Shown: piece by piece, positions 4,580 through 59,411 of the stretch | Layout: each line of letters opens with the position of its first letter | Position numbering within the stretch: the first letter of the stretch is position 1 | Assembly (NCBI RefSeq): GCF_001194135.2 | Contig: NC_068999.1 | Span: forward strand, 32,953,910-33,017,909 | DNA: 64,000 nt | Source of the DNA: Octopus bimaculoides | Taxonomy: Eukaryota | Direction: 5' to 3' | The notes under the pieces: generated by a model | Databases searched by the model: none | Told to the model about the DNA's origin: nothing | What the model saw: only the letters and a program-made list of their open reading frames with translations | Made by a program: the position numbers and the translations under genes

Positions 4580-4638
4580 NNNNNNNNNNNNNNNNNNNNN
4601 NNNNNNNNNNNNNNNNNNNNNNNNNNNNNNNNNNNNNN

Positions 4639-4722
<84 letters not shown>

Positions 4723-6079
4723 CGTATACATGCATGTACACACTCACACATATTTATACACGTATATACTAGCAGCTAAGCCCGGTTTCACCCGGTTGGT
4801 TTGGATGATGTGACTGTAAAACCTGCTCTGTGTAAGCATTTGACTTTTTTGGGCACGCTTATGTTAAAAAATAATTTTAGAATGACTTTTTTCTGTCAAA
4901 ACGCTAAAAATAACTGACCAAATCAAAAAATAAACCCAAATACTAAGCAAACAAAGATGAACCATCCCACTTCCATTGCGCACGCACACACAAACACACA
5001 CACACACATTCACATATCCCCCTTTTACATACACACATATTCACAGAGTTGAAGCGCTGTTTGATTTTTATTTTCAGTATACAATTTTCATCATCCCACT
5101 ACCAAGTATGACATCACCCCTTCCTTTCTCATTCAAAAACACAAGAGTATTATTATAGTACATTATCTCTGTAACCATGGGAGCTATGAAAAAAACACAA
5201 AGTCCAGCATCACCACCGGATCATTCTACACATCTGTGTANNNNNNNNNNNNNNNNNNNNNNNNNNNNNNNNNNNNNNNNNNNNNNNNNNNNNNNNNNNN
5301 NNNNNNNNNNNNNNNNNNNNNNNNNNNNNNNNNNNNNNNNNNNNNNNNNNNNNNNNNNNNNNNNNNNNNNNNNNNNNNNNNNNNNNNNNNNNNNNNNNNN
5401 NNNNNNNNNNNNNNNNNNNNNNNNNNNNNNNNNNNNNNNNNNNNNNNNNNNNNNNNTATATATATATATATATATATGGCATAACTTTCATTTGCTTTTT
5501 AGGTGTATAATTCTGTTTCTTGCAATGATGATCTTGTCTTCTAGTACATTCATAAAAAGAAATACAAAAGGAGTGAGAGTGCACAAAATCAGTGTCAGTT
5601 TATTGTTTGCATTCCTCTGCTTTATATTTTTTATTCAATTGATGTTGAAAGTTCTTCAAACTCCCTGGCTGTTCTCCATCTCAGCTAGGCCAGTGTTCTC
5701 TCAACAATACACTCACACACCTGATACTTTATTGAATTTCTTTAATAACTCACTTGTCACAACTGCTTATATCATATTCAAGTAAATACTGCTTTTGAAA
5801 GCAAGCTCCGCTTAAGTTAACAAGCGTTACGACAACAACTTAGGGTCTCTTCTACTTCTCTCTCTCTCCTCCTCTCTCTCTCTCTCTCCACTGATTTATT
5901 GCTGCTATGTAGCAGCTGTCTTTACCACTCTGTGCATTTCTGCAATTATTCCTCGACAACAACTTATGCCTAGTCTTCAATTCCTTCAGCAATTATTACA
6001 GCTCTTCAAGAACTAGCTTGAGCTGGCTTTGCATTTAGCAATAAGCCTCTTGTGTTCTCTCTCTCTCTCTCTGTCTTTT

Positions 6080-8700: not shown

Positions 8701-11700
8701 CACTGATGCCAGAGATGCCAACAGTAGGTATCATTTTGAGACAGATAAACTGAGGAATAAAAATAAAATTGTTACAATATATTTATTTATTTAGTTAACC
8801 TGTCTGAACAGATTTCGCTACCATTCCAAGTTTTACATAGCTTTCCTCAAGTCCATACAATGGATCTAATGATTTCCTGCTTCTGCTACTCCTGGTATTT
8901 TGCTATGGTGCCCCAAGGGTGATAATAGAACACAAAAGCAGTTGAGCTTTAAATATTTATTATCTCCCCTTTACTGTTTTTTTTTTTTTTAGGTTGTGTT
9001 GTAAGCACTGAATCTACCAATTACACATCTATTGTTTATTGATAGTGGATTTAACTTTCTATTTGTGATTGTTCCAAATATCAGTTATTCTGCTGCTACT
9101 GCTTATATCATGGCAAGAATATGTTCACTAAACCACAATAGCAATATTCTGACAGCACTAGTAAAAAGAACCAAAATCTTACCCTGAGAGTTAAAAAATA
9201 TAGAAAACATCTAGCCAGCTTCCTCCTCTCGTGTAACAACGAACTTGATTTCTTAAAAACTTTCCATCATTTGTTGTCCTCATCTTTTTGTCATGTTCAT
9301 TCTTGTAAGGGTTTGATAAGTTTGGTTTATCAAATTAATGTATCCAAGATAATGTAGTCCTTGCATTTTTAGAATGTAAGATATAATTTGAGGGTAATTT
9401 TGTTACTATTTTTAGCAAGTCAAGTAACCAAGTATATCCCTCCCTGTCTCTGCTTTATTGGAATCATTGTTTAGCAATTAGTATCTCTTGAAGTAATGTT
9501 TCTGACATGTCAGTAACTGTAATCATAGTGATAAACAGAGCAGTTTATTGTATATAACATAGCCTCATACATACTGTGTATAAGATAACCTCTTAGATAC
9601 TATATATATATATATATATATATAATATGATATAGCTATACAGATACTGTATATAACATTGCTTTAGTTAATCATTTAACTGCAAAATTAAATTTCATGG
9701 CTATACCAGTAAGGATGTTAAGAATCTACCAAAAAAAAAGAAATATTTTCTGCAAGTCACGTTGCCTCAATAAACTTGACATAACTTGACAAAAAAATAG
9801 TTAGAAACATGACATTCCTCAACAAAAGATAGAATAGTATATAAAACTGCTATCTTCAGTCAAGGATAATGAAATTTTGAGAGTATATCTGATTTTTGTA
9901 GTAAAACAGTTAAAATGTGATACTGTATATAACACATCCTCAGTTAAGATGTGAAATTCATAGATAATACATGTAACATATAGCACCAATTAAGAAGTAT
10001 TCATGGATAATCTTGCACACCATGTGAACTTGTATATTAATATCCAAAGTTGTTCTTTGTGACACACTTGCTGTAGATCAGTGTTGCATGAAGGGAGTGG
10101 CACTGTTTATATAGTACAAGACTTGTCGTTGACATGTCCTCCACAAGGTCTCAACAAGGAAATAACTTTCATTCTAGCCATTCCAAAGTAACTCTGTTCT
10201 TTTGAGATTCAACTAATTAGGAAATACTTATGGATTCTCTACTGAGTCTATATTGAGCTGTGTTATTGTGTTGGGGAACAGGGGTTATGGTATTTAGATT
10301 GCTATTGTTTGTAGCATCCAGTACTACATTAACTTGGAAGTTATTGGCCCTGGATGTAGAGAGGAGTTGAGTCCACCTACACTGGTTCTTGTAGTATGTC
10401 CACCCACCACTTGTTCTTTGATGGATCCACAGTGAATTCTCCTTGTTTAAATGCTGATGTCTGTTTCTGACTATGTCATATGAAGTTAGTGAAATAATTC
10501 AGTTTTAGCTGTCTTTTCTAACATCAACATCTCTCATGCTTTCTGATTGATAGTAGAACATAACTAATTCTACTCATTTCAATATCAACCTAGTATTTCT
10601 GTCTCAAGTTCCACAACCCTGTTAATACCTTATTCTTCTTTCTCAAAATATTTTTCAAGCAACATTTAAGGTTTGCTATGATTTCACTTCATGTGTTAGT
10701 TTACTGGCCATTAACAACATCTTTATAATCTTTGTTGACAGAAACTTTCAATCATTATTGTATCAAGACACTAATTTATGTATGCAGAACAATTTCCTGT
10801 AAGCTTTCATAATTCTTATCTACTATATATTCTGTGAATGGTGCAGAGTTTGTGTTAAGTTTCAAGAGGTTTTTGAGGGCCAACTGAATATGTGAGAAAG
10901 AAATCTCACTTTGAATATGACAGCAGTCTATTTTGTGCTTCCGTTCTAGATGGTCTGTTAACTATTTTTCATAGCTTAGTAAACAAAGACATAGAATGAA
11001 GTGTAGCAGAATGAAACACCTGCACTGAAATTGAAGTGAAAATCTGTGAATAAGAATTGAACTCATGTTCCTGTGATCCCAGGTTGAATTCCATTGTCTG
11101 TTCCACTAATGTTTATTCCTTCTACTATAGTTACAACCAAACATTCCAGTATGTTTATATATGATAACATTTAGGTGGTTGTTGTGTAATAAGTTATCGC
11201 TGCAACATTTTAACATCATATTTTATCTAACTTACAGAAACAACATTCTTCTTGTTTCTGTCTTTCTTGCACAATTCCAGTCAATCTTCTTTGCCATTGT
11301 CTGTAGTTCTACCCTTTCTCGATAAGCTGATAGAAAAGTTTTCTGGCATTATCTGCTATCTCTTTATGGACAAACCTGTCTTTTGTTTGCATTACAATAA
11401 CTTAAGCGCCTTCTTTCACTCAAACTTAGTTAAACATCTGTTCTGCTTTCACATTTCTTTGTTTTCCCTTTCCCTCCTCACCCCCAACTCTACGGCAGTA
11501 ATGTACTTATGAATATATGATAATGCCTTCACTACCACATAACACCACGTCCTTACCTCTGCACATTAAGGGCTTACTCCCACCCTTTATTGCCAAACAT
11601 CTTAACCACCACACTGCAAGTCCTCACTACCTTACTATGCCACTTCATATCTCCTCTTCCAAGCTGCAACATGTGTCTAATTGCCGCACAATTTATCATC

Positions 11701-11711
11701 ACTGTTGTGAA

Positions 11712-12018
11712 GGCCCGTGGCTCAGTGGTTAGGGCATTCCGCTCACGATCGTAAGGTCGTGAGTTCAATTCCCGGCGACGCGTTGTGTCCTTCAGCAAGA
11801 CACTTTCTTTCACATTGCTCCAGTCCACTCAGCTGGCAAAAATGAGTAGTACCTGTATTTCAAAGGGCCAGCCTTGTCACGCTGAGTCTCCCTGAGAGCT
11901 GCGTTAGGGGTACACGTGTCTGTGGATTGCTCAGTCATTTGCATGTTAATTTCATGAGCAGGCTGTTCCGTTGATCGCATCAGCTGGGACCCTCGTCGTC
12001 GTAACCGACAGAGTGCTC
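11712..12018 (+). mobile_element. tRNA-derived SINE (apparently full length, CpG-rich, so probably young)
   Basis: A box TGGCTCAGTGG and B box GAGTTCAATTCC, followed by ttgtgtccttcagcaagacact and a SINE body. Confidence 0.85.
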
Positions 12019-13890: not shown

Positions 13891-14620
13891 GGTGGCGAGC
13901 TGGCAGAATCATCAGCACCCCGGGCAAAATGCTTAGTGGCATTTTGGTGTCTTTACATTCTGTGTTCAAATTCTGTCATGGTCGACTTCGCCCTTCATCC
14001 TTTCAAGGTCAGTAAAATAAGTTCCAGTTGTGTATTGGGATTGATGTAATTGACTATCCCTCTTCTCCAAATTTCAGGCCTAGTGCTTATAGTAGAAAGG
14101 ATTATTATTATTGTTATTCCGCGGAGTTCGACTTTACCTTTCATCCTTTCTGGGTCGATAAATTAAGTACCAGTGTAACACTGGGAGTTACGTACTAAAC
14201 TAGTCCTCTCCCCCAAAATTTCAGGCCTTGTGCCTTTCGTAGAAAGGATTATTATTACTGAAGGTAGCAAGCTGGCAGAATCATTAGCATGCCAGGCAAA
14301 ATGTTTAGTGGTATTTCACTCATCTTTACATTCTGAGTTCAAATTCCACCGAGGTCAGCTTTGCTTTTCATCCTTTTGGGGTTGATAAATTAAGTACCAG
14401 TGAAACACTGGGCTTGATATAATCGACTTGTTCCCTCTCCTCAAATTTCAGCCCTTGTCCCTTTAGTAGAAAAGATTATTATTATTATTCTGCAGAGGTC
14501 GACTTTGCCTTTCATCCTTTCAGGATCAATAAAGTACCAGTGAAATACTGGGGTTGATGTAATCAACTTCTCCTCTGTCCTAAAATTTCAGGCATTGTGC
14601 CTATGATCGAAAAATTAGTA
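13891..14620 (+). mobile_element. (ATT)n-tailed SINE array (4 head-to-tail copies, some 5'-truncated)
   Basis: Unit ggtggcgagctggcagaatc..aaatgcttag..gagttcaaatt..ctttcatccttt..aagtaccag..agtagaaaggattattatt recurs four times. Confidence 0.85.
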
Positions 14621-15679
14621 GTAGTAGCAGTATTTGGTGGTGCTTTGTTTCTTTAATAAAAACCAACTTTATATGAAGGACCTGGTTCCTAACGAAGAAA
14701 TAAATCTCCATTGCTGGATGTGTGTGTGTGTACATATGCATACATTGTATGCATGCATTTGTATGCGTGATATTGAATCAGGAATAATGTGTTGATAATG
14801 AACGATACAGAGAAATTGTTTTTTCTTTTGTTTTTCATTTTGTTGGTTTCTTGCAAGTAAGTCGAAGTTTTAAAGGAGATATTTCTTATTGAATCAAAAC
14901 TGAAATCGATCTGTGCATGCTCACATGTACACACAAACACATACACTCATCATATATGTAAAATATCGCACACATTGAAATAGATTCTTGCATATATATT
15001 TTGACTGAAATAATCTAATCTCTCGCACTCTCATTTTGGCAGGCAGACATACAAATGCAGCATCACACACACTCATACACACTTGTTCTTGCAAAGATAC
15101 ATATGCAACATCTCTCTCTCTCGCTCTCTCTCACACATTTGCTTTTTCTTAAAGTGACACACACATACACGTTCAACATTACTCTCACACACACACAAGC
15201 TCCCCTCCTGCCTTCTCACATACCAATATAGCATCTATCGATCCTCTATTGGTTATTTTGTTGAGATATGATGGATGACTTCACGCTGCCCTGCCTGTCA
15301 CCACTCCCACCTCCTCCATCACCACTGTCTATCACTATTGTACACTGATCTCCGCATCCATCTGCCAGCCTCCTTCTCCCTGGGTCTGTTGTCATGGTGT
15401 TGCCCGTCTGTGAGTTCTTCACATTAACAACAACCACAATACTGATTTACATAATGGCTTAAAAGCAAGGTTTCAACCTCCCTCCCTTTCTCCCTCACAC
15501 CACTCTCTTTCATTGCTTTTTACCCTCTGCCTATTATTATTATTATTCCTACTAAGTTTATTGTTATTATGATGTTTATAGTTATGGTTATTGTGGACTT
15601 TATTGTTATTATAGTTTTTATTACTATTTATTGTGCCTAAAATTAGAAACAATTAAAAATTATTATTATTATTATTATT

Positions 15680-16604: not shown

Positions 16605-18900
16605 ATGACCATGCTGAGAGTGCAATGTGTGAATGTTCATGATCTGGAGTTAGCTTGGAAGCAAGGTCACTTGATTTAGATGTCGCCACCATTTCTGAAA
16701 CAAGAATTTCCAGAAAACAACCTCTGGTGTCCATTTTGAAGACTGAAAAGATATTCTCATCCTGTGGTCTTTCAGAGCAGGTGGTGGTGTAGCTGTGCTA
16801 TTCTGGAAATCCTTACATCTCCAAGTATTGGCATTTTCTTGGACCTGGAGAGTAAGGTGGTGGCCCTGGACGTGATTGTCAGTGAAGGTGGCGTCTTTAA
16901 ACTGTTTGCTGTTTATGTTCCACAAGGGGCTGGAAAACCAGATTTCTTAAAGGGTCTAGAAACATTATTGGAAACATCTTACACTTTAGTACTAGTGGGG
17001 GGCTGTAGGATACACAGAAGGACTGTGTGAGTCTTGTACATAGCAGAAGTGGGTGTAAAAGCCTTGGTAATCTGTCAGAAACTTACAGCTGTCTGATAGG
17101 TACCAACAGGAATTCCTTGACATGCCACTGTGGAAATGGTGCAACCATTACAGGTCATCCTGAACAACTAGATTTTTAGATAAGAGGATAGGGACAGTAT
17201 AGGTTGTCCACAATTCAAATTGGTTGGCTACTCAGAGCACAAGTTTGCGATCTGCACAGTCAATTTAGATACGACCCAGTTACTGGAAGTTGAACAAGTC
17301 CTTACTGGCATGCAAAAACCTAGAAGAATTAGTAAAGGTATCGCAACCAATGTGCTAGTGGCATGAATGACCTTGACCTTTTTTCTTTTTTTTTTTGAGG
17401 AGAAACAAAAGCTGTTTTGTCAGAGTTAAGTCTGGTGTGCTCAAACACAAAGGAACTAAAGTCATCTGATGAGCCTGAATGGTGGAGATGCAGCATGGCA
17501 ACAAGACTACAGTCAAATCTTTAACAGTTCAGGACAGGTGCATGCTACTTGGTTACGAGCATATGCATGTGGCTTTCCAGCAGTTCTTTGTGTGGCTGTT
17601 TGGGGAGGGCAACGGGTCAATGGCAGTAGTGGGCTTTAGTTTGTACCTGCAGCTCTCAGCAGCAGCAGCAGACACAAGGTTCTGCAAAAAAGCCGATAAC
17701 AGACACTGAAGTACAGGAGGCAATGAACAACAGCACAGGTAATAAATCACCTGGTTTGGATGGTCTGCCCTATGAATTCTGTGTTCATGCCATATTTGAT
17801 GGCTTCTAGGCTGACATCTACCATAACTGGCAGCAGAATGGGAGAATTGCTAGTGCTGTTAGTCGGGGCGTGGTAATACTGTTGAGGAAGTATGCCAACA
17901 ATGGAGATTTTCTAGGGAATTTTCAGTCCATAACTGTTAAACACAGATTTGGGCCAAGGTGTTCATGAAAAGGTGGTGCTTATTATCATGAGTATGGTCA
18001 GGGAAGCACAAACGTGCGCAATCCTCAACAGGTCTATCCATGACAACCTCCACCATCTTAGAGAGGGATGGGACTAAAGCTAGCTTTGGTGGGACCCTGG
18101 TCAATTTGGATCAGTCCAAAGCATTCGATAGAGTTGATCATGGAAGCTATCCTCAGACTGGATTGCTGCAATGCACAGCAACACCAAATTGGTGGTCAAA
18201 ATAAACAGCTACCTAATAGACACATTTCACATCATACACATGGTCTATCAGGGCTGCCCACTGTCACCTCTTCTGTATGTACTGGCTCTTGAGCCATTGC
18301 TGCCTGCAGAAGTTGGAACTGGTAAGGAGCATCCCTTTCAAACTGGGACAAAGGAGGGCAGTGTCAGCATGTGTGGATGACATCACCATCATGGTGTAGG
18401 ATGCATTCTAAAGAAACATGTGTTGGCTGTAGGGGTGAAAATCAATCCCAACAAGTCAATGGGCTTGCCACTGGGTACCTGGAGAGGCAGGTCAATGCTG
18501 TCAGACAGTGGCATCAGATGCTAGACTGAGAGACTAGTTAAACTACTTGGTGTCTGGTTTGGTCCCAATCTCCGAGTTGATAAGAACTGGGATGAGGTGA
18601 TGAACAGGGTGGCCAGTCTTATCCAGAAATGGGCAGAGAGAAAGTTGTCTCTGAAAGGTTGGACAAAGGTGGAAAATGCCTCCATTGTCTCCGTCATCAT
18701 TTATTGCCTCATCATCATGCTTTGCCCCAGTTACTGCTTGATCAGATTGGAGCATCTCTTGTTTATTTTCTTGTGGAAGGCACACATTCCAATGGTGAGG
18801 CAGTCAGTCTGCTGCCTGGAACAATTTCTGGACAGTGAACATGTGTGAGCTCTATTTGTGAGGCGCATCTTTCTGCAGCTCCTCTCTTTTATAGAAGTGT
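16605..18900 (+). mobile_element. Degraded Tx1/L1-clade non-LTR retrotransposon ORF2 (AP endonuclease + reverse transcriptase), with frameshifts and stops
   Basis: Fragments read across frames: MTMLRVQCVNV (APE start, 16605), RAGGGVAVLF, KVVALDVIV..FKLFAVYVPQG, NKSPGLDGLPYEF (~17745), SIHDNLH, NLDQSKAFDRVDH (~18103), QGCPLSPLLYVLALEPLL, SACVDDITIMV (YADD equivalent), VKLLGVWFGP..WAERKLSLKG. Confidence 0.9.
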
Positions 18901-20230: not shown

Positions 20231-21117
20231 GTTTATCATATTTGCAGATTCAATCCTGATTCTCCCAGGATTTGTAGCAGATTATTTCAGAATACATGAC
20301 CTTTTTCTGCAAACCCATTATCATCCAAATCTCAGTTCCAGTCTCTCTCTTTAACATTTCTTTGTTTTATAGAAATTTTCTTCCATATGGAAGCCTATTG
20401 CTTTGTTTTGATGTAGAAAATTATTAGTATTGGTGTTTATACACAGTGCTAACTTTTTTTTTGGGTGGGGGGTGCATCTTGAACATTAGAACTTCCTTTG
20501 TCAATGGTATGTTTTATTTTCTTGTCTCAGGTAGCCAAATTCCTTACCATATATTATATGTGCAGGCTGCAATATCTAATGCTTTGAGCTAAAACTAATT
20601 CTTAGTTGAAATTACAACCAACAAGGCCAGTGGTTCTGACAGTGTCTCTTGCATTACTTTCAAACATTGTACCACAGAGTTAAGTCCTGGTCCTGACAAC
20701 CCTCAAATATTGTATCATAAAGCTAGTCCCTCTGTTCACTGAACTCCTCAATCTCTCCTTTTCTACAGAAAACTCCTGCTGACTCTCCTGAAGGACAGAT
20801 CTTAAAATAGTCCTCCAATGAAGATATGCTAATTTTGTGTTTTTCAGCAAGAAAACACTACTCAAATCAAGAAAATATCATTGCATCAGACCACACCTTA
20901 ATCATGAAAATCATTCATCTACAGCCCTCACAGTTGCTAGTTGTTGGATCTCATTATTACTGTCAATCTCCTTGACCCTTTAACTTTAAAATTAAATTTC
21001 ATGGTTATTCCAGAACTGATGTTAAATATCTACCAAAAAATAGAAATGATATTTTCTGCAAGTCATATCGCATCAGTCAACTTGATATATTTCAACAAAA
21101 TATAGTTTTAGATACGA

Positions 21118-21510
21118 TCATCATCATCATCATCATCGTTTAATGTCCGCTTTCCATGCTAGCATGGGATGGACGATCTGACTGAGGACTGGTGAATCAG
21201 ATGGCTACACCAGGCTCCAATCTGATTTGCCAGAGTTTCTACAGCTGGATGCCCTTCCCAACGCCAACCACTCTGAGAGTGTAGTGGGTGCTTTTATGTG
21301 CCACCAGCACGAAGGCCAGTCAGGTGGTACTGGCAATGGCCACGCTCAAAATGGTGCATTTTATGTGCCACCTGCACAGGAGCCAGTCCAGCGGCACTGG
21401 CAATGATCTCGCTCAAATGTCTTTACACGTGCCAGGAAACGACGCTGGGCACAGGTGCCATCACGATTTCGCTTTCGCTTGCCCAAACAGGTTTTCGCAA
21501 GCTGAGTTTT
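21118..21510 (-). mobile_element. 3' tail of an RTE-like LINE (or derived SINE) with a (CAT)n end
   Basis: (cat)n cgtttaatgtccgctttccatgctagcatggg..ggatgcccttcccaacgccaaccac. Related copies at ~2945-3015, 4215-4520, 40860-41180, 48700-48790, 59870-60130 and 63590-63780. The RTE assignment is from recollection of the family, not a database search. Confidence 0.7.
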
Positions 21511-22479: not shown

Positions 22480-22905
22480 ACACACACATATCGTTCGATG
22501 TATCTATATGTCGATATATAAGCGTTGTCTGTGACTAAGTTTCTACCTGTCTCAAAGCTTATCCAAGCGGTGTGAACAAGACGAGTTTCACAGTCCATTT
22601 TTATATATTTGGCTTATTGCCAGTATTGAATTCTTTCATCAGTAAATATTTTGTTATCATATAACGTGAGTTCACAACTTGATACACGTGCATATAACTG
22701 TTGGTTAGTTTCTAGGTGTATGTGTAGATGTCTCTGTACTTGTATGAAAGTGTATGTGTATTTGCAAGGAATTGTGTGTATACTTGTATGGAAGGATGTG
22801 TATGTGTTTGATTAGACCTCAGTGTAAGAATACTCGACATTGTGTCACATAATACGTAGATATTGCCACAATGAATTGAGAAGGCTTTGCTTGTGCTACA
22901 CATGC

Positions 22906-22938
<33 letters not shown>

Positions 22939-23120
22939 TACATATACCCGCGCGCGCGCGCATTACAGTAAATTCTATTTCTTGATGGGTATGTGGTTTA
23001 TGTGCTTTAGCTGCCTGTATAGCAACTACCTGTGGCTGGTACTGAGAACACACACACACACAGGTAAAACGACCTGTAGTGATAACGAAAGGAGTATGAT
23101 ATTACACACACATTTATATA

Positions 23121-23151
<31 letters not shown>

Positions 23152-24665
23152 GTATCTCTAGCAGCAGCGCTGTTGTAGAGGACACTGGCAGTTAGTGCTG
23201 CTGTTGCTGCTGCTGATGGTGGTGGTGGCGTTGTTTAGCCCCAGGTTAACCGATTCAGCAGATCTATGAGCAAAGGCAATCCAGTTGTGACTATTATGTC
23301 TCTTTAAGGGTAACTAAGATTATTTTACTTAATGTCTTTTTATTTTATTTAACGCGGTATTATGATTTGAGGGAGATTCGGCTGTTATTTCTAGCAGTCG
23401 AGCGGGTGCATAGAAGCTTCCCTCATTGTTTCAAGATGATGATGATGATGATGGTGGCGGCAGGAATGTTTAACCTGATGCAAGTACTGGGAGTGGGGTA
23501 GTGGTAATTTGCACCGGGAAGACGGCGGCAGCAGCAGCAGCAGCAACGGAGTCGGCGGGTCGACGATAGAATCGCGGGAATAAGAAGGAGGAGGAAAGAG
23601 GAGGAGAAGGATGAGGTGGCTACCAGTGGTGAATAAACTGCAGACGTTGTGGTCGCCTACTAGCGACTGACTTACAACATCATTATCAACAACAGTAGCA
23701 ACAACAAAAACAACTACAACAGGTTACCAAGATGAAACAAACCTCGGACTGCTGACAACACCCTCTCCACTCCTGGGGGGAGGTCTCTCTTTTATATACA
23801 TCTCTCTCTCTTTCTCTCTATCTTTTTATTTGAACAATTAACCTTAATTTTTATTAATCTGTTATACATATATACACATTTCATATTACACAGACGCATA
23901 TACATATTAGCTGGATATATATATATGTGCATGCGTATATATAATTTATATACACAAAGTCAGTAATATATATATTGTAGTAGAGTTGGGGAAGGCGCCC
24001 AACATGATTCGTCAGCGTTGACTTCTACACTGCAACAGATAGATACATAGATAGCCCTCTCTATCTACCTCTACACCCCGATAGGCATAGAAATCTCATT
24101 CTCTGCTTCTCTTTATATATATATTTTGCTCTATCTATTTTTATATATCTCTCCCTATCTATCTGTCTATCTATCTGTGTCTGTCTCTCCGTGTGAAACT
24201 GGTTGTTTTAAAAATCTCTTTTGGAAATGTTTTACCTGCTGCTGTTTGCTGCCACAATTACTTCTTCTACCATCGCTACCACCAACCGTACCTACCTCTA
24301 ACTAAACAACAATATTATAAAGCAGTCTCTGTCACATAATATATAGACATCTTTCTCTCTGTGCATGTCTCTCTCTCTTATTCTCTCTCTCTTGTGTGTC
24401 CCAAACCTCGGCATTCCAATTCTACAATCTGTCGCTAAACAATTTCAACAGTCGGCTTTAAGAAGAGACTTATTCCAGTCTCGGCAGGCTTATGACACTA
24501 CCGATGAAGGCCGTCACGAGGTAGGTGAACATATCTCTCCCTCTCTCTCTCTCTCTTTGTCTACCTATCTATTTTATTTATTTTCATCTCTCTCCGACTC
24601 TTTATCTATCTCTATCGCATTGCTGCAGAACTACACTTACCTTTGCTCCAGCTCTCTCTCTCTCT

Positions 24666-24703
<38 letters not shown>

Positions 24704-25519
24704 CGCCTCTATTTTCATTACCTTAACTGTCTCTCCTCTCCAAACTATTCCCGCACCGACTCCTGCAAACTATTGCGCGCACACACACACACACACACCT
24801 ATATATTTATCTCTCTATCTCACACATATTTTGCAACTAAAGCTTCCCTTACAACTGTAGTACTTGTACTTCGTAAATTTTACAGACTCTCAATTATATT
24901 ACTACTGCTGTTACTACATGTAGTAATAGTAGTACTATATAGTAGTTCCATTGCTAATCCAAACACGCCCACGTTCGATTCTCAACCATTTGCATTGTTT
25001 TTCTTCTGTTTGCCTTCTTTCAATTCTCGATGTCAGTTTAGTAGCAAATGTAATTTTGATTTTCGTATATTTTTGTATAAGTTAAACAACCTATGATGTG
25101 TGTGTGTGACATTGTCAACACTGCTCTCTCTCTCTCTCTCTCTCCCGTACACAAACATTTCTCTCTTCAATAAACCAGTCTTTGGAATGGTTATTCTTTT
25201 ATTTGTTTCAGTCATTTGACTGCGAGAAAAAATAAATAAATAAATAACTGTCTTCTACGAGTGTTTGTTTACCCATGTTGGGTGAACTTAGTGTCTAAGA
25301 ATAGCATTTAATCTAACCATTCTAAATTCCTTGCTAACTCATTTCAGTCATAACCATCATCTCCAGGAAGGATTCCTGTCTTTTATGCAGTCGTGGGGTG
25401 GGTCTGGTGTTAATCAGATCTTCGTAACATGTTGCTTGATGAATCCATTTCCTTAAAAATAATACAATACTTTTGGACGGTATTTTTCTGTTTCGCTCTT
25501 ATAGAATTCTAGGGTGGAT

Positions 25520-25564
<45 letters not shown>

Positions 25565-25760
25565 TGTATTTTCATTTTCTCTGTCGGGTAGCGCTTGTCT
25601 GGATTGTAAGAATACAAGAACTGTTCACTCTGAGCATATTACTTGGGGTACTGCTGAACAAAATGGCGAAGATTTCCAAATCCAGTAATATAGTTTGGGA
25701 TTTATTTTCATGTCTTATTCTGATTCGTCAACAATGGATCTCGCCTTTTTATATTTCACT
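22480..25760. promoter_or_regulatory. CpG-retaining (putatively unmethylated) region; probable internal promoter
   Basis: By eye, CG dinucleotides are frequent here (e.g. cccgcgcgcgcgc ~22950, cggcggcag...gtcggcgggtcgacgatagaatcgcggg 23520-23580, 24410-24520) but scarce in the flanking non-repeat DNA. The region has (CT)n/(CA)n tracts and a strong donor at 24521. CpG density was not computed. Confidence 0.6.
24492..24520 (+). CDS. Candidate coding part of an alternative 5' exon of Dlg (MTLPMKAVT + R across the junction)
   Basis: ATG ACA CTA CCG ATG AAG GCC GTC ACG AG|GTAGGT: strong donor at 24521 in phase 2, matching the PDZ3 exon. There is an in-frame TAA upstream at 24459-24461. The exon lies in the main CpG-retaining region. 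Splicing is inferred, not shown. Confidence 0.55.
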
Positions 25761-26672
25761 AATTCCATTTCGTCTAATTACAATTAGATATATATATTTT
25801 TAAAGCCTGCGTATTGTTATTATTAGTATTATTATCATCATCATCCGCTACCACCCTACCTCTCCATCCCCTGCACACTGCAATAAAATTTAGTTTAATA
25901 TCAGTTTCGGTGAGATTGATATCTACCCTGTAGTTCATTTTTATCTGTAACACACAACTACAATAGACTTTTAATTAATATAAAATATATTGAAATTTAT
26001 TTTTAGTTTCTGTGGCAAATGTCTTTTTAGTTTTGCCTCTTTAAGTGGCACCAACTTGTTATAAGAACATCTGATGGCTGCTTTTGGTTCCACTCTAACG
26101 ATTGATAGAAAAAGAAAACATTCAGTTTGTTGCTATACATGGATCTGGATCTCTTTAAAAATGAGCCTGCAAAATCATAGTGGTAGTTGTAATAATAATA
26201 GTAATAGTAATAATAATAATAATTGAATCTCGTAATAATGTACTTTTCGTGACTTATACTTCCCTACTTCAGGCATGGAAGAGAAGATACTCAACAGAAG
26301 TGTATAAGATTTCAGCTATTTTCGGCCACTCCCAGCTCTTCAGACTGTACATTTCTTACTCAACCCAGCATTTATATTTTCTTACAGAACTGTTTCTTAT
26401 TCAAAACTTATCATAACCAGATTTTTTTTGCTTCTTGCCATTGTTCTTGCAACCTTCTTATAACCTGTTCAACCCCTGCTATCACCACTCCCTCTCTCAT
26501 CACCATCACTAAGTTAAATTGTGTGTAGGTGCTTCTAATAGTACAAAAACATTTGCAATGCTTGTGATGAAAATGTAAGGTTTAATGTGTATGTTTATCT
26601 CTATATATATATGTGTGTGTGTGTGTGAAGAGAGAGGGAGAGGGGTATGTATCTGTGTATGTTTAGATATAC

Positions 26673-34039: not shown

Positions 34040-34579
34040 NNNNNNNNNNNNNNNNNNNNNNNNNNNNNNNNNNNNNNNNNNNNNNNNNNNNNNNNNNNNN
34101 NNNNNNNNNNNNNNNNNNNNNNNNNNNNNNNNNNNNNNNNNNNNNNNNNNNNNNNNNNNNNNNNNNNNNNNNNNNNNNNNNNNNNNNNNNNNNNNNNNNN
34201 NNNNNNNNNNNNNNNNNNNNNNNNNNNNNNNNNNNNNNNNNNNNNNNNNNNNNNNNNNNNNNNNNNNNNNNNNNNNNNNNNNNNNNNNNNNNNNNNNNNN
34301 NNNNNNNNNNNNNNNNNNNNNNNNNNNNNNNNNNNNNNNNNNNNNNNNNNNNNNNNNNNNNNNNNNNNNNNNNNNNNNNNNNNNNNNNNNNNNNNNNNNN
34401 NNNNNNNNNNNNNNNNNNNNNNNNNNNNNNNNNNNNNNNNNNNNNNNNNNNNNNNNNNNNNNNNNNNNNNNNNNNNNNNNNNNNNNNNNNNNNNNNNNNN
34501 NNNNNNNNNNNNNNNNNNNNNNNNNNNNNNNNNNNNNNNNNNNNNNNNNNNNNNNNNNNNNNNNNNNNNNNNNNNNNNN

Positions 34580-37710: not shown

Positions 37711-38070
37711 AAAAGACCCCCTTTGGTTATGAATGACCATGGGATTGCATCTAGAAAGTTCCCCTTGGAGGTACAAGTCAGGCAAATTTGTTTATGGAAG
37801 ACCAGCAATCACCTGTGCATATTAGCCTCCCCTCTCCACNNNNNNNNNNNNNNNNNNNNNNNNNNNNNNNNNNNNNNNNNNNNNNNNNNNNNNNNNNNNN
37901 NNNNNNNNNNNNNNNNGCATCAGTGATGTTGCAACTCATTTCTACAACTGAGTGAACTGTAGCAATGTGAAATAAAGTGTCTTGCTCAAGAACACAACAC
38001 ACAGCCCAGTTCGGGAATCAAACTCTCTACCTCATGACTGTGAGCCTGATGCTCTAATCACTGAGCCATG
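37711..38070 (-). mobile_element. tRNA-derived SINE (reverse copy, interrupted by an N gap)
   Basis: Reverse complement of the 29255-29578 family; the head reads tggctcagtgattagagcatcaggctc on the minus strand. Confidence 0.8.
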
Positions 38071-38674
38071 CAGTCCCCTGGGGCATAGGCCATCAACAAT
38101 CTCCCTCCATGCATCCCTGTTCTAGACCTTCCTCTGCAGTTGTCTGCTACCATTATCCCCACTTGTGTCCCATCCCACTCTTAGCATGTCACTCAGAGAA
38201 TTCCAGAAATTCACTGAGCTCAGATTTGCTTTGGTTTTTTCCAACATTTCTGTTGTTGTGTGATTTTTATGGGTTTTTGTAGAGTTTTTATAGGTCTTTT
38301 TAAAGGTTTTTGTAGAGCAAAGCTTCCCACCACATGCCAAGTCCCTGAACCCCCTCACCCACTAATCTGGATGACCAGGGGCTACTCTTTGAGCTGCCCA
38401 GCATGACTGAACCTGTTAAGGAGGTTGAACCCTCAGCCAGTATGGCCCTCAGGGTCATAAATGCATGAAAGCTCTCTAACCATGGCAAAGCAGCAGTCAG
38501 TGAGGGGAACCTGATGCTCTTGTTTATATCTGTTCAGGGTAACATGTGGTCTATATTGTTACTAAATGCGTTACTTACCACATAGAAAAAAGCTGTTGTT
38601 ATGTCAGAAACTTCACCTTTGCAACAATTTGAAGATATTTCAATAATCGATGTCGATAGAATTTATAAAACATA

Positions 38675-39067
38675 GGCGCAGGAGTGGCTGTGTGGTAAGT
38701 AGCTTGCTTACCAACCGCATGGTTCCGGGTTCAGTCCCACTGCGTGGCACCTTGGGCAAGTGTCTTCTACTATAGCCTCGGGCCGACCAAAGCCTTGTGA
38801 GTGGATTTGGTAGATGGAAACTGAAAGAAGCCCGTCGTATATATGTATATATATATGTATATGTGTGTGTCTGTGTTTGTTCCCCCAACAACGCTTGACA
38901 ACTGATGCTGGTGTGTTTCCGTCCCCGTAACTTAGCAGTTCGGCAAAAGAGACCGATAGAATAAGTACTAGGCTTCCAAAGAATAAGTCCTGGGGTCGAT
39001 TTGCTCGACTAAAGGCGGTGCTACAGCATGGCCACAGTCAAATGACTGAAACAAGTAAAAGAGTAAA
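38675..39067 (+). mobile_element. tRNA-derived SINE with a central (TA/TG)n tract, apparently full length
   Basis: ggcgcaggagtggctgtgtggtaag..gggttcagtcccactgcgtggcaccttgggcaagtgtcttctactatagcc head/core and ...gactgaaacaagtaaaaga tail. Partial related copies at ~3320-3460, ~39400-39870 (reverse) and ~44520-44590 (reverse). Confidence 0.85.
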
Positions 39068-39704
39068 CTTTTGATAGTACATGAATTAATTCTCTTTTTG
39101 AAATTGGATCTTGATGCACATAAATGCTATAAATAATAACATGTAAATATTGGGTTGAAAATCCATTTTGGATAGAAATATTTGAAGGCTACCTATGGGA
39201 TATGAACCCACATCTTTTGTAGACATAACAAGAATTATTTCAACATGACATAGGCAGTCTCCAACTGCTAAAATGTGGTCACATCCCACTGCAATCAGTC
39301 TGGAGTTGCTGTGTCTATGGTTAAATATACTGAATTCTACTGTTAGAGGTTTGCCTACTGCAAGCACCTGTTCTCCAACTCTTTGAAGAAACTCAGTTGT
39401 GAAAGCTTAGTCTCCAATCCAGGTTATCCTTTTAATATCACAGAAACCATATCTCTTATCTTTTGTTTCAGTCATTAGACCATGGCCGTACTGGGACAGT
39501 ACTTACAAGGGTTCTTAGTTGAATGACTTGACCCCAGTACTTATATAGCCTGTTACTTGTTCTGATGCTCTTTTGCTGAATCAGTAAGTTTCTGGAGTGT
39601 AATCATTTAACACCAGTCATCAAACAATAGCCGGGGACAAACAGATGCACGGATCTCTCNNNNNNNNNNNNNNNNNNNNNNNNNNNNNNNNNNNNNNNNN
39701 NNNN

Positions 39705-53327: not shown

Positions 53328-55278
53328 TGAAGTACTAGTCCACTACTAGAGTCAAGTCTTTTCTTTCTTCCATTCTTTCTGAAGGAAATTAGCTATGGTC
53401 AAACCTGGATAAAGATGGGTTCTATCAAGTCTAAAAATGCCAAGAGTGACAAGAGTTTTAACATTGTCTTTACTAATGACATCAACTGTTGATGATCACA
53501 AATAGGTGGCAACACCAGTCACAGTTAATCTTAAGGTGCTAGTTGATATTGTAGTGACATAAAAATAAAATGTGCAAGTCTGGTAGTTTAGGAGATTACT
53601 TTCAACTTTATGGTCTTCCTACAATTCATATTGATGGATTGACTTCACTGACATCTCTCAATTGCAGTGCGTTTATATTCTAGCAAAGAAAGAAAAAAAA
53701 ATCTGTTTTCATCTTTCTACAGACTTAAATATAGAAGTCATGGTAAGGAGATATCAGATATTACCAGGATTATGGCAATAACTGATATATATATATGGTG
53801 TGTGTATGTATATATATATATATATATATATNNNNNNNNNNNNNNNNNNNNNNNNNNNNNNNNNNNNNNNNNNNNNNNNNNNNNNNNNNNNNNNNNNNNN
53901 NNNNNNNNNNNNNNATCACTAAGCAGTGTTTAGGCATAAGCAAAAATTAGGTAAGTTAAAATATGTTTGTGACATATCAGTCTTGAGTGGCAGATAATAG
54001 AATATATATGAACCATTTATATATATGTTTCCATTTATAAAAGTATGTGTGTGTGTACATATATATATTAGTTTGTAAATATGTGCATATGACTGTCTGT
54101 GTTTGTGTGTATGTATATTTCATTTTGATCAAGTCAGTCTTGCTTGTTGGGGCACAGGGTCTTCAGACCACACACAACCAAGTATGCATACAAAAAATAT
54201 ACAAAGGTGCACACACACACACACACACACGTGTACACTTATATATACACAGGCAAGTACATACTTGGTGAACATGTGGCAATATCTCTTCCTTCATATA
54301 TATATGCAAAATTTAGGTTAGTCAAAATATGTTTGTGACGTATTTCAAATGCTAAAAGGCAAATACACTGCAGTGAAAATACCCCGTTTGTTTAGTGTTG
54401 CCATCTATCAGGAATCCCAGACATCAATGTATCGAGTTCATTGACTCTTGTCATGGGATGTACCTAAGAGAGGCAACTCTGAACAAACTTATAAAGCAAC
54501 AGCTTTATGTAAAATTCAGTAAACACGTTGACTGATTTACACTAGTAGATTGCCCATTTGAGGGAAATAACAAAATGTTAGTGCTATTGATAAAAGTCAA
54601 TAAACTCAAACCATCAATGTCTGGGATTCCTGATAGATGGCGAAACTGAACAAACCTTTGCCATAAGATGGTGACACTAAACAAACCTTTGCCATAAGAG
54701 AGATATTTTCACCATGGTAACTGTACTGTATTTACCTGTTAGCAGTTGAAATATGTCACAAACCTATTTCAACTAACCTAGTTTTTGCTTATGCCTAAAC
54801 ACTGCTTAGCGATAACATTTCATTTTATATATATATATATATACACACACAATATATATATATCAGTTATTGCTATAATCCTGGTAATATCTGATATCTC
54901 CTTACCATGACTTCTATATTTAAGTCTGTAGAAAGATGAAAATAGATTTTTTTTTTCTTTCTTTGCTAGAATATAAACACACTGCAATTGAGAGATATCA
55001 GTGAAGTCAATTCATCAAACATGAATTGTAGGAAGACCATAAAGTTGAAAGTAATCTCCTAAACTACCAGACTTGCACACTTTATTTTTATGTCACTACA
55101 ATATCAACTAGCACCTTAAGATTAACTGTGACTGGTGTTGCCACCTATTTGTGATCATCAACAGTTGATGTCATTAGTAAAAACATCAATGTTAAAACTC
55201 TTGTCACTCTCCTCCTGAATTCCTTAAGTTTCTTTGTTACATAAACACAACAACTGCATTTAAGGCTTACTGTGAGCA

Positions 55279-59254: not shown

Positions 59255-59411
59255 AGAACCAAGAAGAATAGTTCTAAACAAAGGCTCGACTGGTCTAGGA
59301 TTTAATATTGTTGGTGGTGAAGATGGAGAAGGGATTTTTGTTTCATTCATTTTGGCAGGGGGACCTGCCGATCTCAGTGGAGAGCTTCGACGAGGTGACC
59401 AAATACATTCG
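59255..59411 (+). CDS. dlg1: Internal coding exon of a Discs-large (Dlg1/SAP97/PSD-95 family) MAGUK; N-terminal part of PDZ3 including the GLGF loop
   Basis: Manual translation: A|GAA CCA AGA AGA... = (R)[52 protein letters not shown], nearly identical to vertebrate DLG1-4 and fly Dlg PDZ3. It is flanked by a pyrimidine-rich ttcAG acceptor (AG 59253-59254) and a G|GTAAGT donor (GT 59412-59413). Length is 157 nt = 1 + 52 codons, so it enters in phase 2 and exits in phase 0. Confidence 0.97.

What the first reader, a model, noticed from the sequence alone, without database searches (positions are those of the whole stretch)
24459..24526. Micro coding 5' exon MTLPMKAVT|R with a strong phase-2 donor inside the CpG island
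Seen: in-frame TAA (24459), then ATG 24492 and ATG 24504, then AG|GTAGGT. Joined to the PDZ3 exon this gives ...KAVTREPRR, which resembles the T-R-E-P-R junction of fly and vertebrate Dlg (EITREPR/DITREPR). An alternative reading uses the ttccAG acceptor at 24477-24478 to make a 42-nt symmetric cassette exon (24479-24520; LGRLMTLPMKAVT in phase 2).
Basis: partly seen in the sequence, partly recalled or inferred. Interest (0 to 1): 0.72.

Follow-up and report, generated by a model that had tools for sequence, protein, structure and literature searches.

The report
Alternative first exon of octopus Dlg

Summary
There is a TAA at 24459, ATGs at 24492 and 24504, and a donor GAG|GTAGGT after 24520 that carries two bases of a split codon. 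Spliced across a 34,734-nt intron to the only Dlg exon in the window (first half of PDZ3, 59255-59411), it reads [26 protein letters not shown].

These 62 residues are identical to the N-terminus of XP_014780563.1, 'disks large homolog 2-like isoform X3' of Octopus bimaculoides. That model is 484 aa and has one PDZ, an SH3 and a guanylate-kinase domain.

The exon lies in the window's main CpG-retaining stretch (22.5-26.25 kb, CpG o/e 0.67 against 0.20 elsewhere). In octopus, a gap like this in a methylated gene body is typical of transcription start sites.

So it is most likely a coding first exon driven by an intronic promoter. It would make a Dlg isoform that lacks the N-terminal region, PDZ1 and PDZ2.

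- The sequence pattern alone is not rare: 3-6 such sites occur per strand in 64 kb.
- The T-R-E-P-R resemblance does not reflect orthology. The other annotated octopus isoforms read ...DPDSP|EPRR or ...DSRIPR|EPRR.
- The cassette reading has ordinary acceptors and no matching protein.

I could not inspect RNA reads. Verdict: already annotated, low interest.

The parts
24492..24520 (+). Coding part of the alternative first exon: ATG ACA CTA CCG ATG AAG GCC GTC ACG AG, giving M T L P M K A V T plus two bases of Arg. A second in-frame ATG is at 24504.
   Evidence: The joined translation is identical to the first 62 aa of P0367 / XP_014780563.1.
24459..24461 (+). In-frame TAA that closes the frame upstream. 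If the exon is contiguous here, ATG 24492 is the first possible start.
24521..24526 (+). 5' splice site GTAGGT, with exon side GAG. It is the strongest + strand donor inside the CpG-retaining domain.
   Evidence: 10.4 bits, with the next best + strand donor in 22.5-26.4 kb at 9.3 bits.
24366..24491 (+). Inferred 5' UTR and start-site zone. It holds no ATG. An upstream ATG at 24365 would open a 68-codon overlapping reading frame in the spliced mRNA, so a translated isoform probably starts downstream of it.
   Evidence: This is an inference; no start-site data are available.
22501..26250 (.). CpG-retaining domain inside a CpG-depleted intron, presumed hypomethylated. Candidate intronic promoter.
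   Evidence: o/e 0.67 against 0.20. In the octopus methylome, methylated gene bodies lack methylation at start sites (PMC9476566).
24521..59254 (+). Intron of 34,734 nt between the alternative first exon and the PDZ3 exon.
59255..59411 (+). Exon for the first half of Dlg PDZ3, (R)[52 protein letters not shown]. It is shared by all isoforms.
   Evidence: It is 100% identical to the O. sinensis, O. vulgaris and O. bimaculoides Dlg proteins.

Best explanation
Positions 24492-24520 are the coding end of an alternative first exon of the octopus Discs-large (Dlg) MAGUK gene.

Transcription would start in an intronic, CpG-retaining and presumably unmethylated promoter region, most likely within about 125 nt upstream of ATG 24492. 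The exon would be spliced from GAG|GTAGGT at 24520, across a 34.7-kb intron, to the PDZ3 exon at 59255. Translation from ATG 24492 (or 24504) would give a 484-aa, 54-kDa isoform made of PDZ3, SH3, the HOOK linker and the guanylate-kinase-like domain. It would lack the variable N-terminus (L27 or other), PDZ1 and PDZ2.

Shown:
- the sequence features and the phase fit;
- identity to the RefSeq isoform X3 model;
- the domain content of that model;
- the CpG contrast.

Inferred:
- RNA reads underlie the model;
- the domain acts as a promoter, and where the start site lies;
- function. An isoform that keeps the PDZ3 and SH3-GK partners but cannot bind PDZ1/2 ligands or multimerise through its N-terminus could act as a specialised scaffold or a competing one.
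For: - The joined CDS 24492-24520 + 59255-59411 translates to [20 protein letters not shown]...GDQIHS. This is identical to residues 1-62 of P0367 = XP_014780563.1, 'PREDICTED: disks large homolog 2-like isoform X3 [Octopus bimaculoides]'.
- P0367 differs from isoform X1 (P0366) only in its N-terminal exon.
- Pfam on P0367 finds PDZ 15-90, SH3 129-188 and Guanylate_kin 294-470. The full-length isoform P0362 has three PDZ stretches.
- The in-frame stop at 24459, the two ATGs and the phase-matched donor are all present.
- The donor is the best + strand donor in the domain.
- The exon sits in the largest CpG-retaining domain of the window. In O. bimaculoides, one large class of genes has methylated bodies but unmethylated start sites and promoters (PMC9476566).
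- No other Dlg exon lies in the 59 kb upstream of the PDZ3 exon. The exon is therefore isolated in a long intron, as expected of an internal start.
- The micro-exon region is single-copy within the window.
- Internal start sites and alternative coding first exons are documented for the DLG family (PMC6389146; PMC5518101). The Lygus hesperus UniProt entries P0222 and P0224, which I take from their accession series to be transcriptome-derived, begin with their own short N-terminus directly before PDZ3.
Against: - The only external support is a computational Gnomon model. It is held in this database solely through EukProt's copy of the older O. bimaculoides annotation. The exact protein is not recorded from NCBI, O. 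sinensis or O. vulgaris sources, and neither are four other HOOK-variant versions of it.
- No RNA reads, start-site data or orthologous DNA could be examined.
- The sequence pattern alone arises by chance 3-6 times per strand in 64 kb.
- Both ATGs have pyrimidine at -3 and A at +4, which is weak by the vertebrate Kozak rule.
- The domain has G+C of only 0.373.
- Donors of equal strength lie on the opposite strand inside the domain, so the domain could serve another transcript.
Confidence: 0.75

Rival explanations
1. Chance open frame plus donor, with the RefSeq isoform X3 being an annotation artefact. Examples would be an ab initio 5' extension of a truncated model in a fragmented draft assembly, or a model built on rare or noisy splice reads. 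Under this view no meaningful protein isoform starts here.
For: - The pattern occurs 3 times on the + strand and 6 times on the control strand.
- The Kozak contexts are weak.
- The old O. bimaculoides models are all 5'-truncated relative to the 728-773-aa O. sinensis and O. vulgaris proteins.
- The X3 protein is recorded only from the older annotation copy.
Against: - The exon coincides with the main CpG-retaining domain.
- X3 differs from X1 only in the first exon. From my own knowledge of the NCBI pipeline, not checked here, alternative variants are normally emitted only when transcript alignments support them.
- A 29-nt coding exon 34.7 kb upstream is an unlikely ab initio choice.
Confidence: 0.12
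2. The exon is an internal cassette micro-exon, 24479-24520 (42 nt) or 24488-24520 (33 nt). It would be included in full-length Dlg transcripts between the PDZ2-PDZ3 linker and PDZ3, inserting (P)LGRLMTLPMKAVT.
For: - Both candidate lengths are multiples of three.
- The upstream exon of the full-length isoforms ends with two bases of a split codon (..DPDS + CC, read as Pro with the A of the PDZ3 exon). Insertion would therefore stay in frame.
- A CTAAAC branch-point-like motif lies about 40 nt upstream.
Against: - The acceptors are ordinary: 10/20 and 12/20 pyrimidines, against a mean of 10.0 for all AGs and 17/20 for the true PDZ3 acceptor.
- None of the nine octopus proteins in the cluster contains the peptide internally, and nor does any of the 481 retrieved proteins.
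- A cluster representative carrying it would have ranked near the top, and none did.
- Caveat: O. sinensis isoforms X1-X8 were not seen.
Confidence: 0.06
3. The CpG-retaining domain is the promoter or regulatory region of something else, such as an antisense or non-coding transcript or an enhancer. The Dlg micro-exon would then be a minor by-product.
For: - Donors as strong or stronger lie on the - strand inside the domain: 24641 at 12.2 bits, 24296 at 10.4 and 25860 at 10.1.
- The densest CpG stretch (23.25-24.0 kb) lies 0.5-1.2 kb upstream of the exon.
- Several upstream ATGs would burden any mRNA that started there.
Against: - No Rfam family or tRNA was found.
- No protein-like ORF or Pfam hit was found in or beside the domain.
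- The annotated product does use the exon.
Confidence: 0.07

Closest known systems
XP_014780563.1, disks large homolog 2-like isoform X3, Octopus bimaculoides (RefSeq Gnomon model; P0367 here)
   Same: Its N-terminus MTLPMKAVTREPRR... and the following PDZ3 residues are identical to the window's spliced translation over all 62 residues encoded here. It has the single-PDZ, SH3 and GK architecture.
   Different: Nothing differs at the sequence level; this is the same feature. It is a prediction, and I found no experimental characterisation of it.
Mouse Dlg2 (PSD-93) eta isoforms made from internal transcription start sites (PMC6389146)
   Same: An internal start site in a very long DLG gene yields an N-terminally truncated isoform of about 50 kDa that survives disruption of upstream exons.
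   Different: The mouse eta isoform starts further downstream and lacks all three PDZ domains (SH3-GK only). The octopus isoform keeps PDZ3. The two first exons share no sequence.
Human and mouse DLG2 novel promoters and coding first exons (PMC5518101), and the alpha/beta/gamma... N-terminal variants of DLG genes
   Same: DLG genes use several promoters, each with its own short coding first exon spliced to common exons.
   Different: Those first exons join upstream of PDZ1 and change only the N-terminal targeting module. The octopus exon joins at PDZ3 and removes PDZ1-2.
Lygus hesperus PDZ-domain proteins A0A0K8SFE9 and A0A0K8T194 (P0224, P0222)
   Same: A Dlg product that begins with a private short N-terminus (MTKERQ...KILNK) joined directly to the EPR.. 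start of PDZ3. It is the same kind of truncation, in another protostome.
   Different: The N-terminal peptide is unrelated in sequence. P0224 also ends early, after the start of SH3. I did not examine its genomic structure.
Canonical exon encoding the end of the PDZ2-PDZ3 linker in Dlg genes (vertebrate ..RYSPxPKxxLGDDDxT|R)
   Same: It ends in Thr plus two bases of the Arg codon, and it uses the conserved intron position before EPR.
   Different: The micro exon has no acidic run and no RYSP motif. The likely octopus counterpart of that exon is ..KKKEPYYYDSRIP|R, which resembles gastropod ..REPYFYDPRVR|R. That exon is not in the window.

Membership tests
Dlg-subfamily MAGUK gene (locus identity) | An exon encoding the Dlg-type PDZ3 N-terminal half, with the conserved intron position before EPR | tested here: met
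It is 100% identical to octopus Dlg proteins. The same intron position appears in vertebrate and invertebrate genomic fragments.
Dlg-subfamily MAGUK gene (locus identity) | The product carries PDZ, SH3 and guanylate-kinase-like domains in that order | tested here: met
   Pfam on P0367 gives PDZ 15-90, SH3 129-188 and Guanylate_kin 294-470. The SH3 and GK exons lie outside the window.
Alternative coding first exon with its own promoter | An initiator ATG with an in-frame upstream stop, and an open frame to a donor whose phase matches the common exon | tested here: met
Alternative coding first exon with its own promoter | A transcript or gene model that begins with this exon and joins it to the common exon | tested here: met
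   XP_014780563.1 (P0367) begins MTLPMKAVTREPRR. This is a predicted model; the underlying reads were not seen.
Alternative coding first exon with its own promoter | Direct evidence of transcription initiation at the exon (5'RACE, CAGE or capped reads) | not testable with these tools
   No cephalopod RNA or start-site data are reachable. A metagenome DNA scan for the exon found nothing.
Alternative coding first exon with its own promoter | Promoter-like chromatin or sequence context | tested here: inconclusive
   The CpG-retaining domain has o/e 0.67 against 0.20 elsewhere. This fits unmethylated start sites in methylated octopus gene bodies (PMC9476566). It is only a proxy, and the domain's G+C is low.
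Alternative coding first exon with its own promoter | Conservation of the exon (ATG, frame, donor) in related species | not testable with these tools
   The O. vulgaris gene spans 335.6 kb and no DNA was returned. The O. sinensis gene is recorded only under its longest product. Exact-sequence look-ups of the short isoform in other sources were negative.
Cassette micro-exon | A functional 3' splice site (polypyrimidine tract plus AG) at the exon's 5' edge | tested here: not met
   The counts are 10/20 and 12/20 pyrimidines, equal to the background of all AGs (mean 10.0). The true PDZ3 acceptor has 17/20, which is in the top 0.8%.
Cassette micro-exon | An isoform carrying the peptide internally | tested here: not met
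   No LGRLM/TLPMK-containing protein other than P0367 is among the 481 retrieved proteins, and none is among the top-ranked proteins. Not all O. sinensis isoforms were seen.
Orthologue of the canonical linker-end exon (..DDEIT|R) | It is the exon used by full-length isoforms immediately before PDZ3, with the acidic/RYSP motif | tested here: not met
   Full-length octopus isoforms read ..RPLTDPDSP|EPRR. Another exon gives ..EPYYYDSRIPR|EPRR. The micro exon shares only the final Thr.

The most novel reading that the evidence does not exclude
The intronic promoter and its PDZ3-SH3-GK-only product could be an old, separately regulated 'half-Dlg' shared among protostomes; the Lygus proteins that begin directly before PDZ3 hint at this. 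It might have its own role in cephalopod neurons or epithelia. The same 29-42 nt might also serve as a cassette in full-length transcripts.
Probability: 0.08. Interest if true: 0.4.

Novelty: already known. Interest (0 to 1): 0.12.

Why it matters
The result shows that a tool-free reading of raw sequence recovered a 29-nt coding first exon lying 34.7 kb from its partner exon. It also shows that a CpG-retaining gap in a CpG-depleted octopus gene body is a useful pointer to internal start sites.

Biologically, a single-PDZ Dlg isoform would add to scaffold diversity made from one gene. This bears on the argument that molluscs reach synaptic protein diversity through alternative transcripts rather than gene duplication (PMC9282427). 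However, the isoform is already in a public annotation, and alternative promoters are a well-known property of DLG genes. The finding therefore adds little.

Tried and rejected
**Protein searches**
- The first search used the 62-aa joined peptide. It returned only fragments of 109 aa or less, mostly intron read-through ORFs from genomic contigs.
- The second search used a 226-aa composite. It returned only proteins of 395 aa or less.
- From these two results I inferred that the tool keeps targets up to about 1.75 times the query length. I got round this with ten tandem copies of the 66-aa unit, which brought in the Octopus sinensis protein and, through its cluster, the O. bimaculoides models.
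- The exhaustive representative search added nothing.

**Look-ups that failed or gave no DNA**
- Exact look-ups of three mechanical window ORFs found nothing. The assembly is therefore not in the gene-position collection.
- Look-ups of P0367 and P0338 found no gene record.
- P0361 gave a 335.6-kb gene but no DNA.

**Searches for other exons**
- I searched the window for a canonical '..DDEIT|R' exon, and for the ..DPDS and ..EPYYYDSRIP exons. None is present.

**Side branch**
- L001, a compact Dlg locus from an unidentified invertebrate, did not help with the junction.

**Other negatives**
- Rfam and tRNA scans were empty.
- The domain is not repeated within the window.
- Pfam on ten ORFs from GC- or CpG-rich patches was empty.
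- The supplement of the PDZ3/CRIPT paper holds no octopus sequence.
- A metagenome scan for the exon found no hits.

**Rejected ideas**
- The micro exon is the octopus counterpart of the canonical linker-end exon. The passing likeness of PMKAV to human DLG1 ..PVSKAV.. was recalled from memory and is not backed by any test.
- The domain is a transposon.

Full report
**Observation**

The stated features are all present.
- TAA is at 24459-24461.
- In-frame ATGs are at 24492 and 24504.
- The exon ends at 24520 in ACG AG|GTAGGT, so two bases of a codon are carried over.
- CAG| sites lie at 24476-24478 and 24485-24487.

The only recognisable Dlg exon in the window is the first half of PDZ3 at 59255-59411. 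Its acceptor is ttcag|A GAA CCA AGA AGA and its donor is TCG|GTAAGT. It begins with the third base of a codon, so AG from 24519-24520 plus A gives AGA, Arg. The joined reading is [26 protein letters not shown].... The intron is 34,734 nt.

**Is it more than chance?**

On the sequence alone, no.
- A simple donor weight matrix gives 10.4 bits for GAG|GTAGGT, against 13.0 for the consensus.
- Thirteen sites per strand in the 64 kb score at least as high.
- An ATG-started frame, closed upstream by a stop and open into such a donor with two bases of a split codon, occurs three times on the + strand. It occurs six times on the - strand, which cannot serve this gene.

Two things set this site apart: its position and an external match.

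**Context**

The window is strongly CpG-depleted, with o/e 0.235 overall. The stretch 22501-26250 has o/e 0.67, against 0.20 for everything else. Its G+C is only 0.373, so it is a CpG-retaining domain rather than a vertebrate-type island.

The micro exon lies in the middle of this domain and contains four CpGs. The domain is single-copy within the window. It has no Rfam or tRNA hit and no protein-like ORF.

In O. bimaculoides, methylation is concentrated on a subset of gene bodies. A large class of genes has methylated bodies but unmethylated start sites and promoters (PMC9476566). A CpG-retaining gap inside a depleted intron therefore fits an internal start site. This is an inference, not a measurement.

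**External evidence**

The first two protein searches returned only short fragments. I worked out that the tool keeps targets no longer than about 1.75 times the query, and then searched with ten tandem copies of the 66-aa unit.

That search retrieved P0338, which is XP_029648068.1, Octopus sinensis disks large homolog 2 isoform X10. Its PDZ3 N-terminal half is 100% identical to the window's exon.

The 90% cluster of P0338 has nine members. Among them is P0367, which is XP_014780563.1, 'PREDICTED: disks large homolog 2-like isoform X3 [Octopus bimaculoides]', 484 aa. It begins [26 protein letters not shown]. The window's spliced translation equals its first 62 residues exactly.

P0367 has one PDZ (15-90), an SH3 (129-188) and a guanylate-kinase-like domain (294-470). 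The full-length isoforms have three PDZ stretches. Its calculated mass is 54.2 kDa.

**What the other isoforms say about the junction**

Three different upstream exons feed the same acceptor in the annotated proteins.
- Full-length O. sinensis and O. vulgaris isoforms (P0338, P0361-P0363) read ...TFQRPTTPRPLTDPDSP|EPRR. Their upstream exon ends in CC, and the split codon is Pro.
- O. bimaculoides X1, X2, X4 and X6 begin MYKSVRNTKKKEPYYYDSRIPR|EPRR. This resembles an internal segment of a gastropod Dlg..IMHKTEGRREPYFYDPRVR|RDPRK (P0195). It is the more likely counterpart of the canonical exon that encodes the end of the PDZ2-PDZ3 linker.
- The third is the micro exon, used by X3.

Neither of the first two exons is in the window.

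The T-R-E-P-R likeness is real. Vertebrates read ..DDDVT|R EPRK and ..DDDIT|R EPRK, and a spider reads ..ENFT|R EPRK. In octopus, however, it does not mark the canonical exon. I treat the shared Thr as coincidence.

**The cassette alternative**

- The two candidate acceptors have 10/20 and 12/20 pyrimidines in the preceding 20 nt. This is the background value for all 3,418 AGs in the window (mean 10.0). The real PDZ3 acceptor has 17/20, in the top 0.8%.
- None of the 481 retrieved proteins carries the peptide internally.
- A cluster representative carrying LGRLMTLPMKAVT plus PDZ3 would have ranked near the top.
- O. sinensis isoforms X1-X8 were not seen, so the cassette is unsupported rather than excluded.

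**Mechanism proposed**

An intronic promoter in the CpG-retaining domain would start a transcript whose first exon ends at 24520. Splicing to the PDZ3 exon places ATG 24492 in frame.

In such an mRNA, the upstream ATG at 24365 would open a 68-codon overlapping reading frame. No ATG lies between 24366 and 24491. A translated isoform therefore most likely starts in that 126-nt zone.

Both ATGs have weak contexts by the vertebrate Kozak rule. The next in-frame Met is about residue 104 of P0367 and would truncate PDZ3. Initiation within the micro exon is therefore what preserves a whole PDZ3.

From general knowledge of the family, the product would keep the ligands of PDZ3 and of the SH3-GK module. 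It would lose PDZ1/2 ligands and N-terminal multimerisation or targeting. Whether it acts as a specialised scaffold or a competitor is not known.

**Comparison with what is known**

- DLG genes are documented to use several transcription start sites and coding first exons (PMC6389146; PMC5518101).
- Mouse Dlg2 eta is an internally initiated, truncated isoform of about 50 kDa, but it lacks all PDZ domains.
- Lygus hesperus UniProt entries begin with a private peptide directly before PDZ3 (P0222 and P0224). I infer from their accession series that they are transcriptome-derived.
- Alternative intronic promoters that generate scaffold diversity in molluscs have been described for Aplysia unc13 (PMC9282427).

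The octopus exon is thus an ordinary instance of a known kind, and it is already annotated.

**Limits**

- The support is a predicted model. It reached this database only through EukProt's copy of the older O. bimaculoides annotation.
- The exact protein is not recorded from NCBI, O. sinensis or O. vulgaris sources. Four other HOOK-variant versions of it are also absent.
- From my own knowledge, the NCBI pipeline emits alternative variants only with transcript support, and X3 differs from X1 only in the first exon. I did not see the evidence line or any reads.
- No orthologous DNA could be obtained, so conservation is untested.

**Verdict**

- Observation: confirmed.
- Primary interpretation: supported by an independent annotation.
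- Cassette alternative and orthology argument: not supported.
- Novelty: already known.
- Interest: low.

Noticed in passing
window 17630-18850 (+): A frameshifted remnant of a non-LTR retrotransposon reverse transcriptase. Fragments GNKSPGLDGLPYEF, LDQSKAFDRVDH, GCPLSPLLYVLALEPL, VDDITIMV and KLLGVWFG appear in successive frames. This explains the G+C rise at 17-19 kb. Pfam on three ORFs from this region was negative.
   Followed up: partly
window 21001-21500; 11001-12000; 14001-15000; 38001-39000: Further short CpG-rich patches lie outside the main domain, with 17 CpG in 500 nt and 23, 16 and 18 CpG per kb. Their nature is unknown. ORFs from two of them gave no Pfam hit.
   Followed up: partly
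This rests on my recollection of the consensus and is untested.
   Followed up: no
window 24365: An upstream ATG in another frame would give a 68-codon overlapping uORF in the spliced mRNA, and several short uORFs lie further upstream. This constrains where a productive start site can be.
   Followed up: yes
not in the window (upstream of position 1, or in gaps): Two exons are absent from the 59 kb upstream of the PDZ3 exon. One encodes MYKSVRNTKKKEPYYYDSRIP, the N-terminus of O. bimaculoides isoforms X1, X2, X4 and X6. The other encodes ..RPLTDPDS of the full-length isoforms. The preceding intron is therefore longer than 59 kb, and the O. vulgaris gene spans 335.6 kb.
   Followed up: partly
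window 4580-4638, 5241-5456, 34040-34579, 37840-37916, 39660-39704, 53832-53914: Runs of N mark assembly gaps in a draft assembly.
   Followed up: no
window 23150-23600; 24640-24800; 25525-25568; 24895-24941: Low-complexity features lie around the exon. They include CAG/CTG/GAT/GGA triplet runs in the densest CpG stretch, (CT)n and (CA)n tracts just downstream of the donor, a long run of T (about 44-46 nt), and a 47-nt imperfect palindrome (about 83% match).
   Followed up: no
L001 18335-18900 (ENA ERZ21939214 ctg11216l, unidentified invertebrate): About four (four or five) tandem, diverged copies of the exon encoding the start of the guanylate-kinase domain (..YKRPVIILGP..) sit in a compact Dlg gene. 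They could be mutually exclusive exons or an assembly artefact.
   Followed up: no
tool behaviour: the search for homologous proteins appears to return only targets up to about 1.75 times the query length: 62 aa gave at most 109, 226 aa at most 395, and 660 aa at most 1087. Short queries therefore miss full-length eukaryotic proteins.
   Followed up: yes
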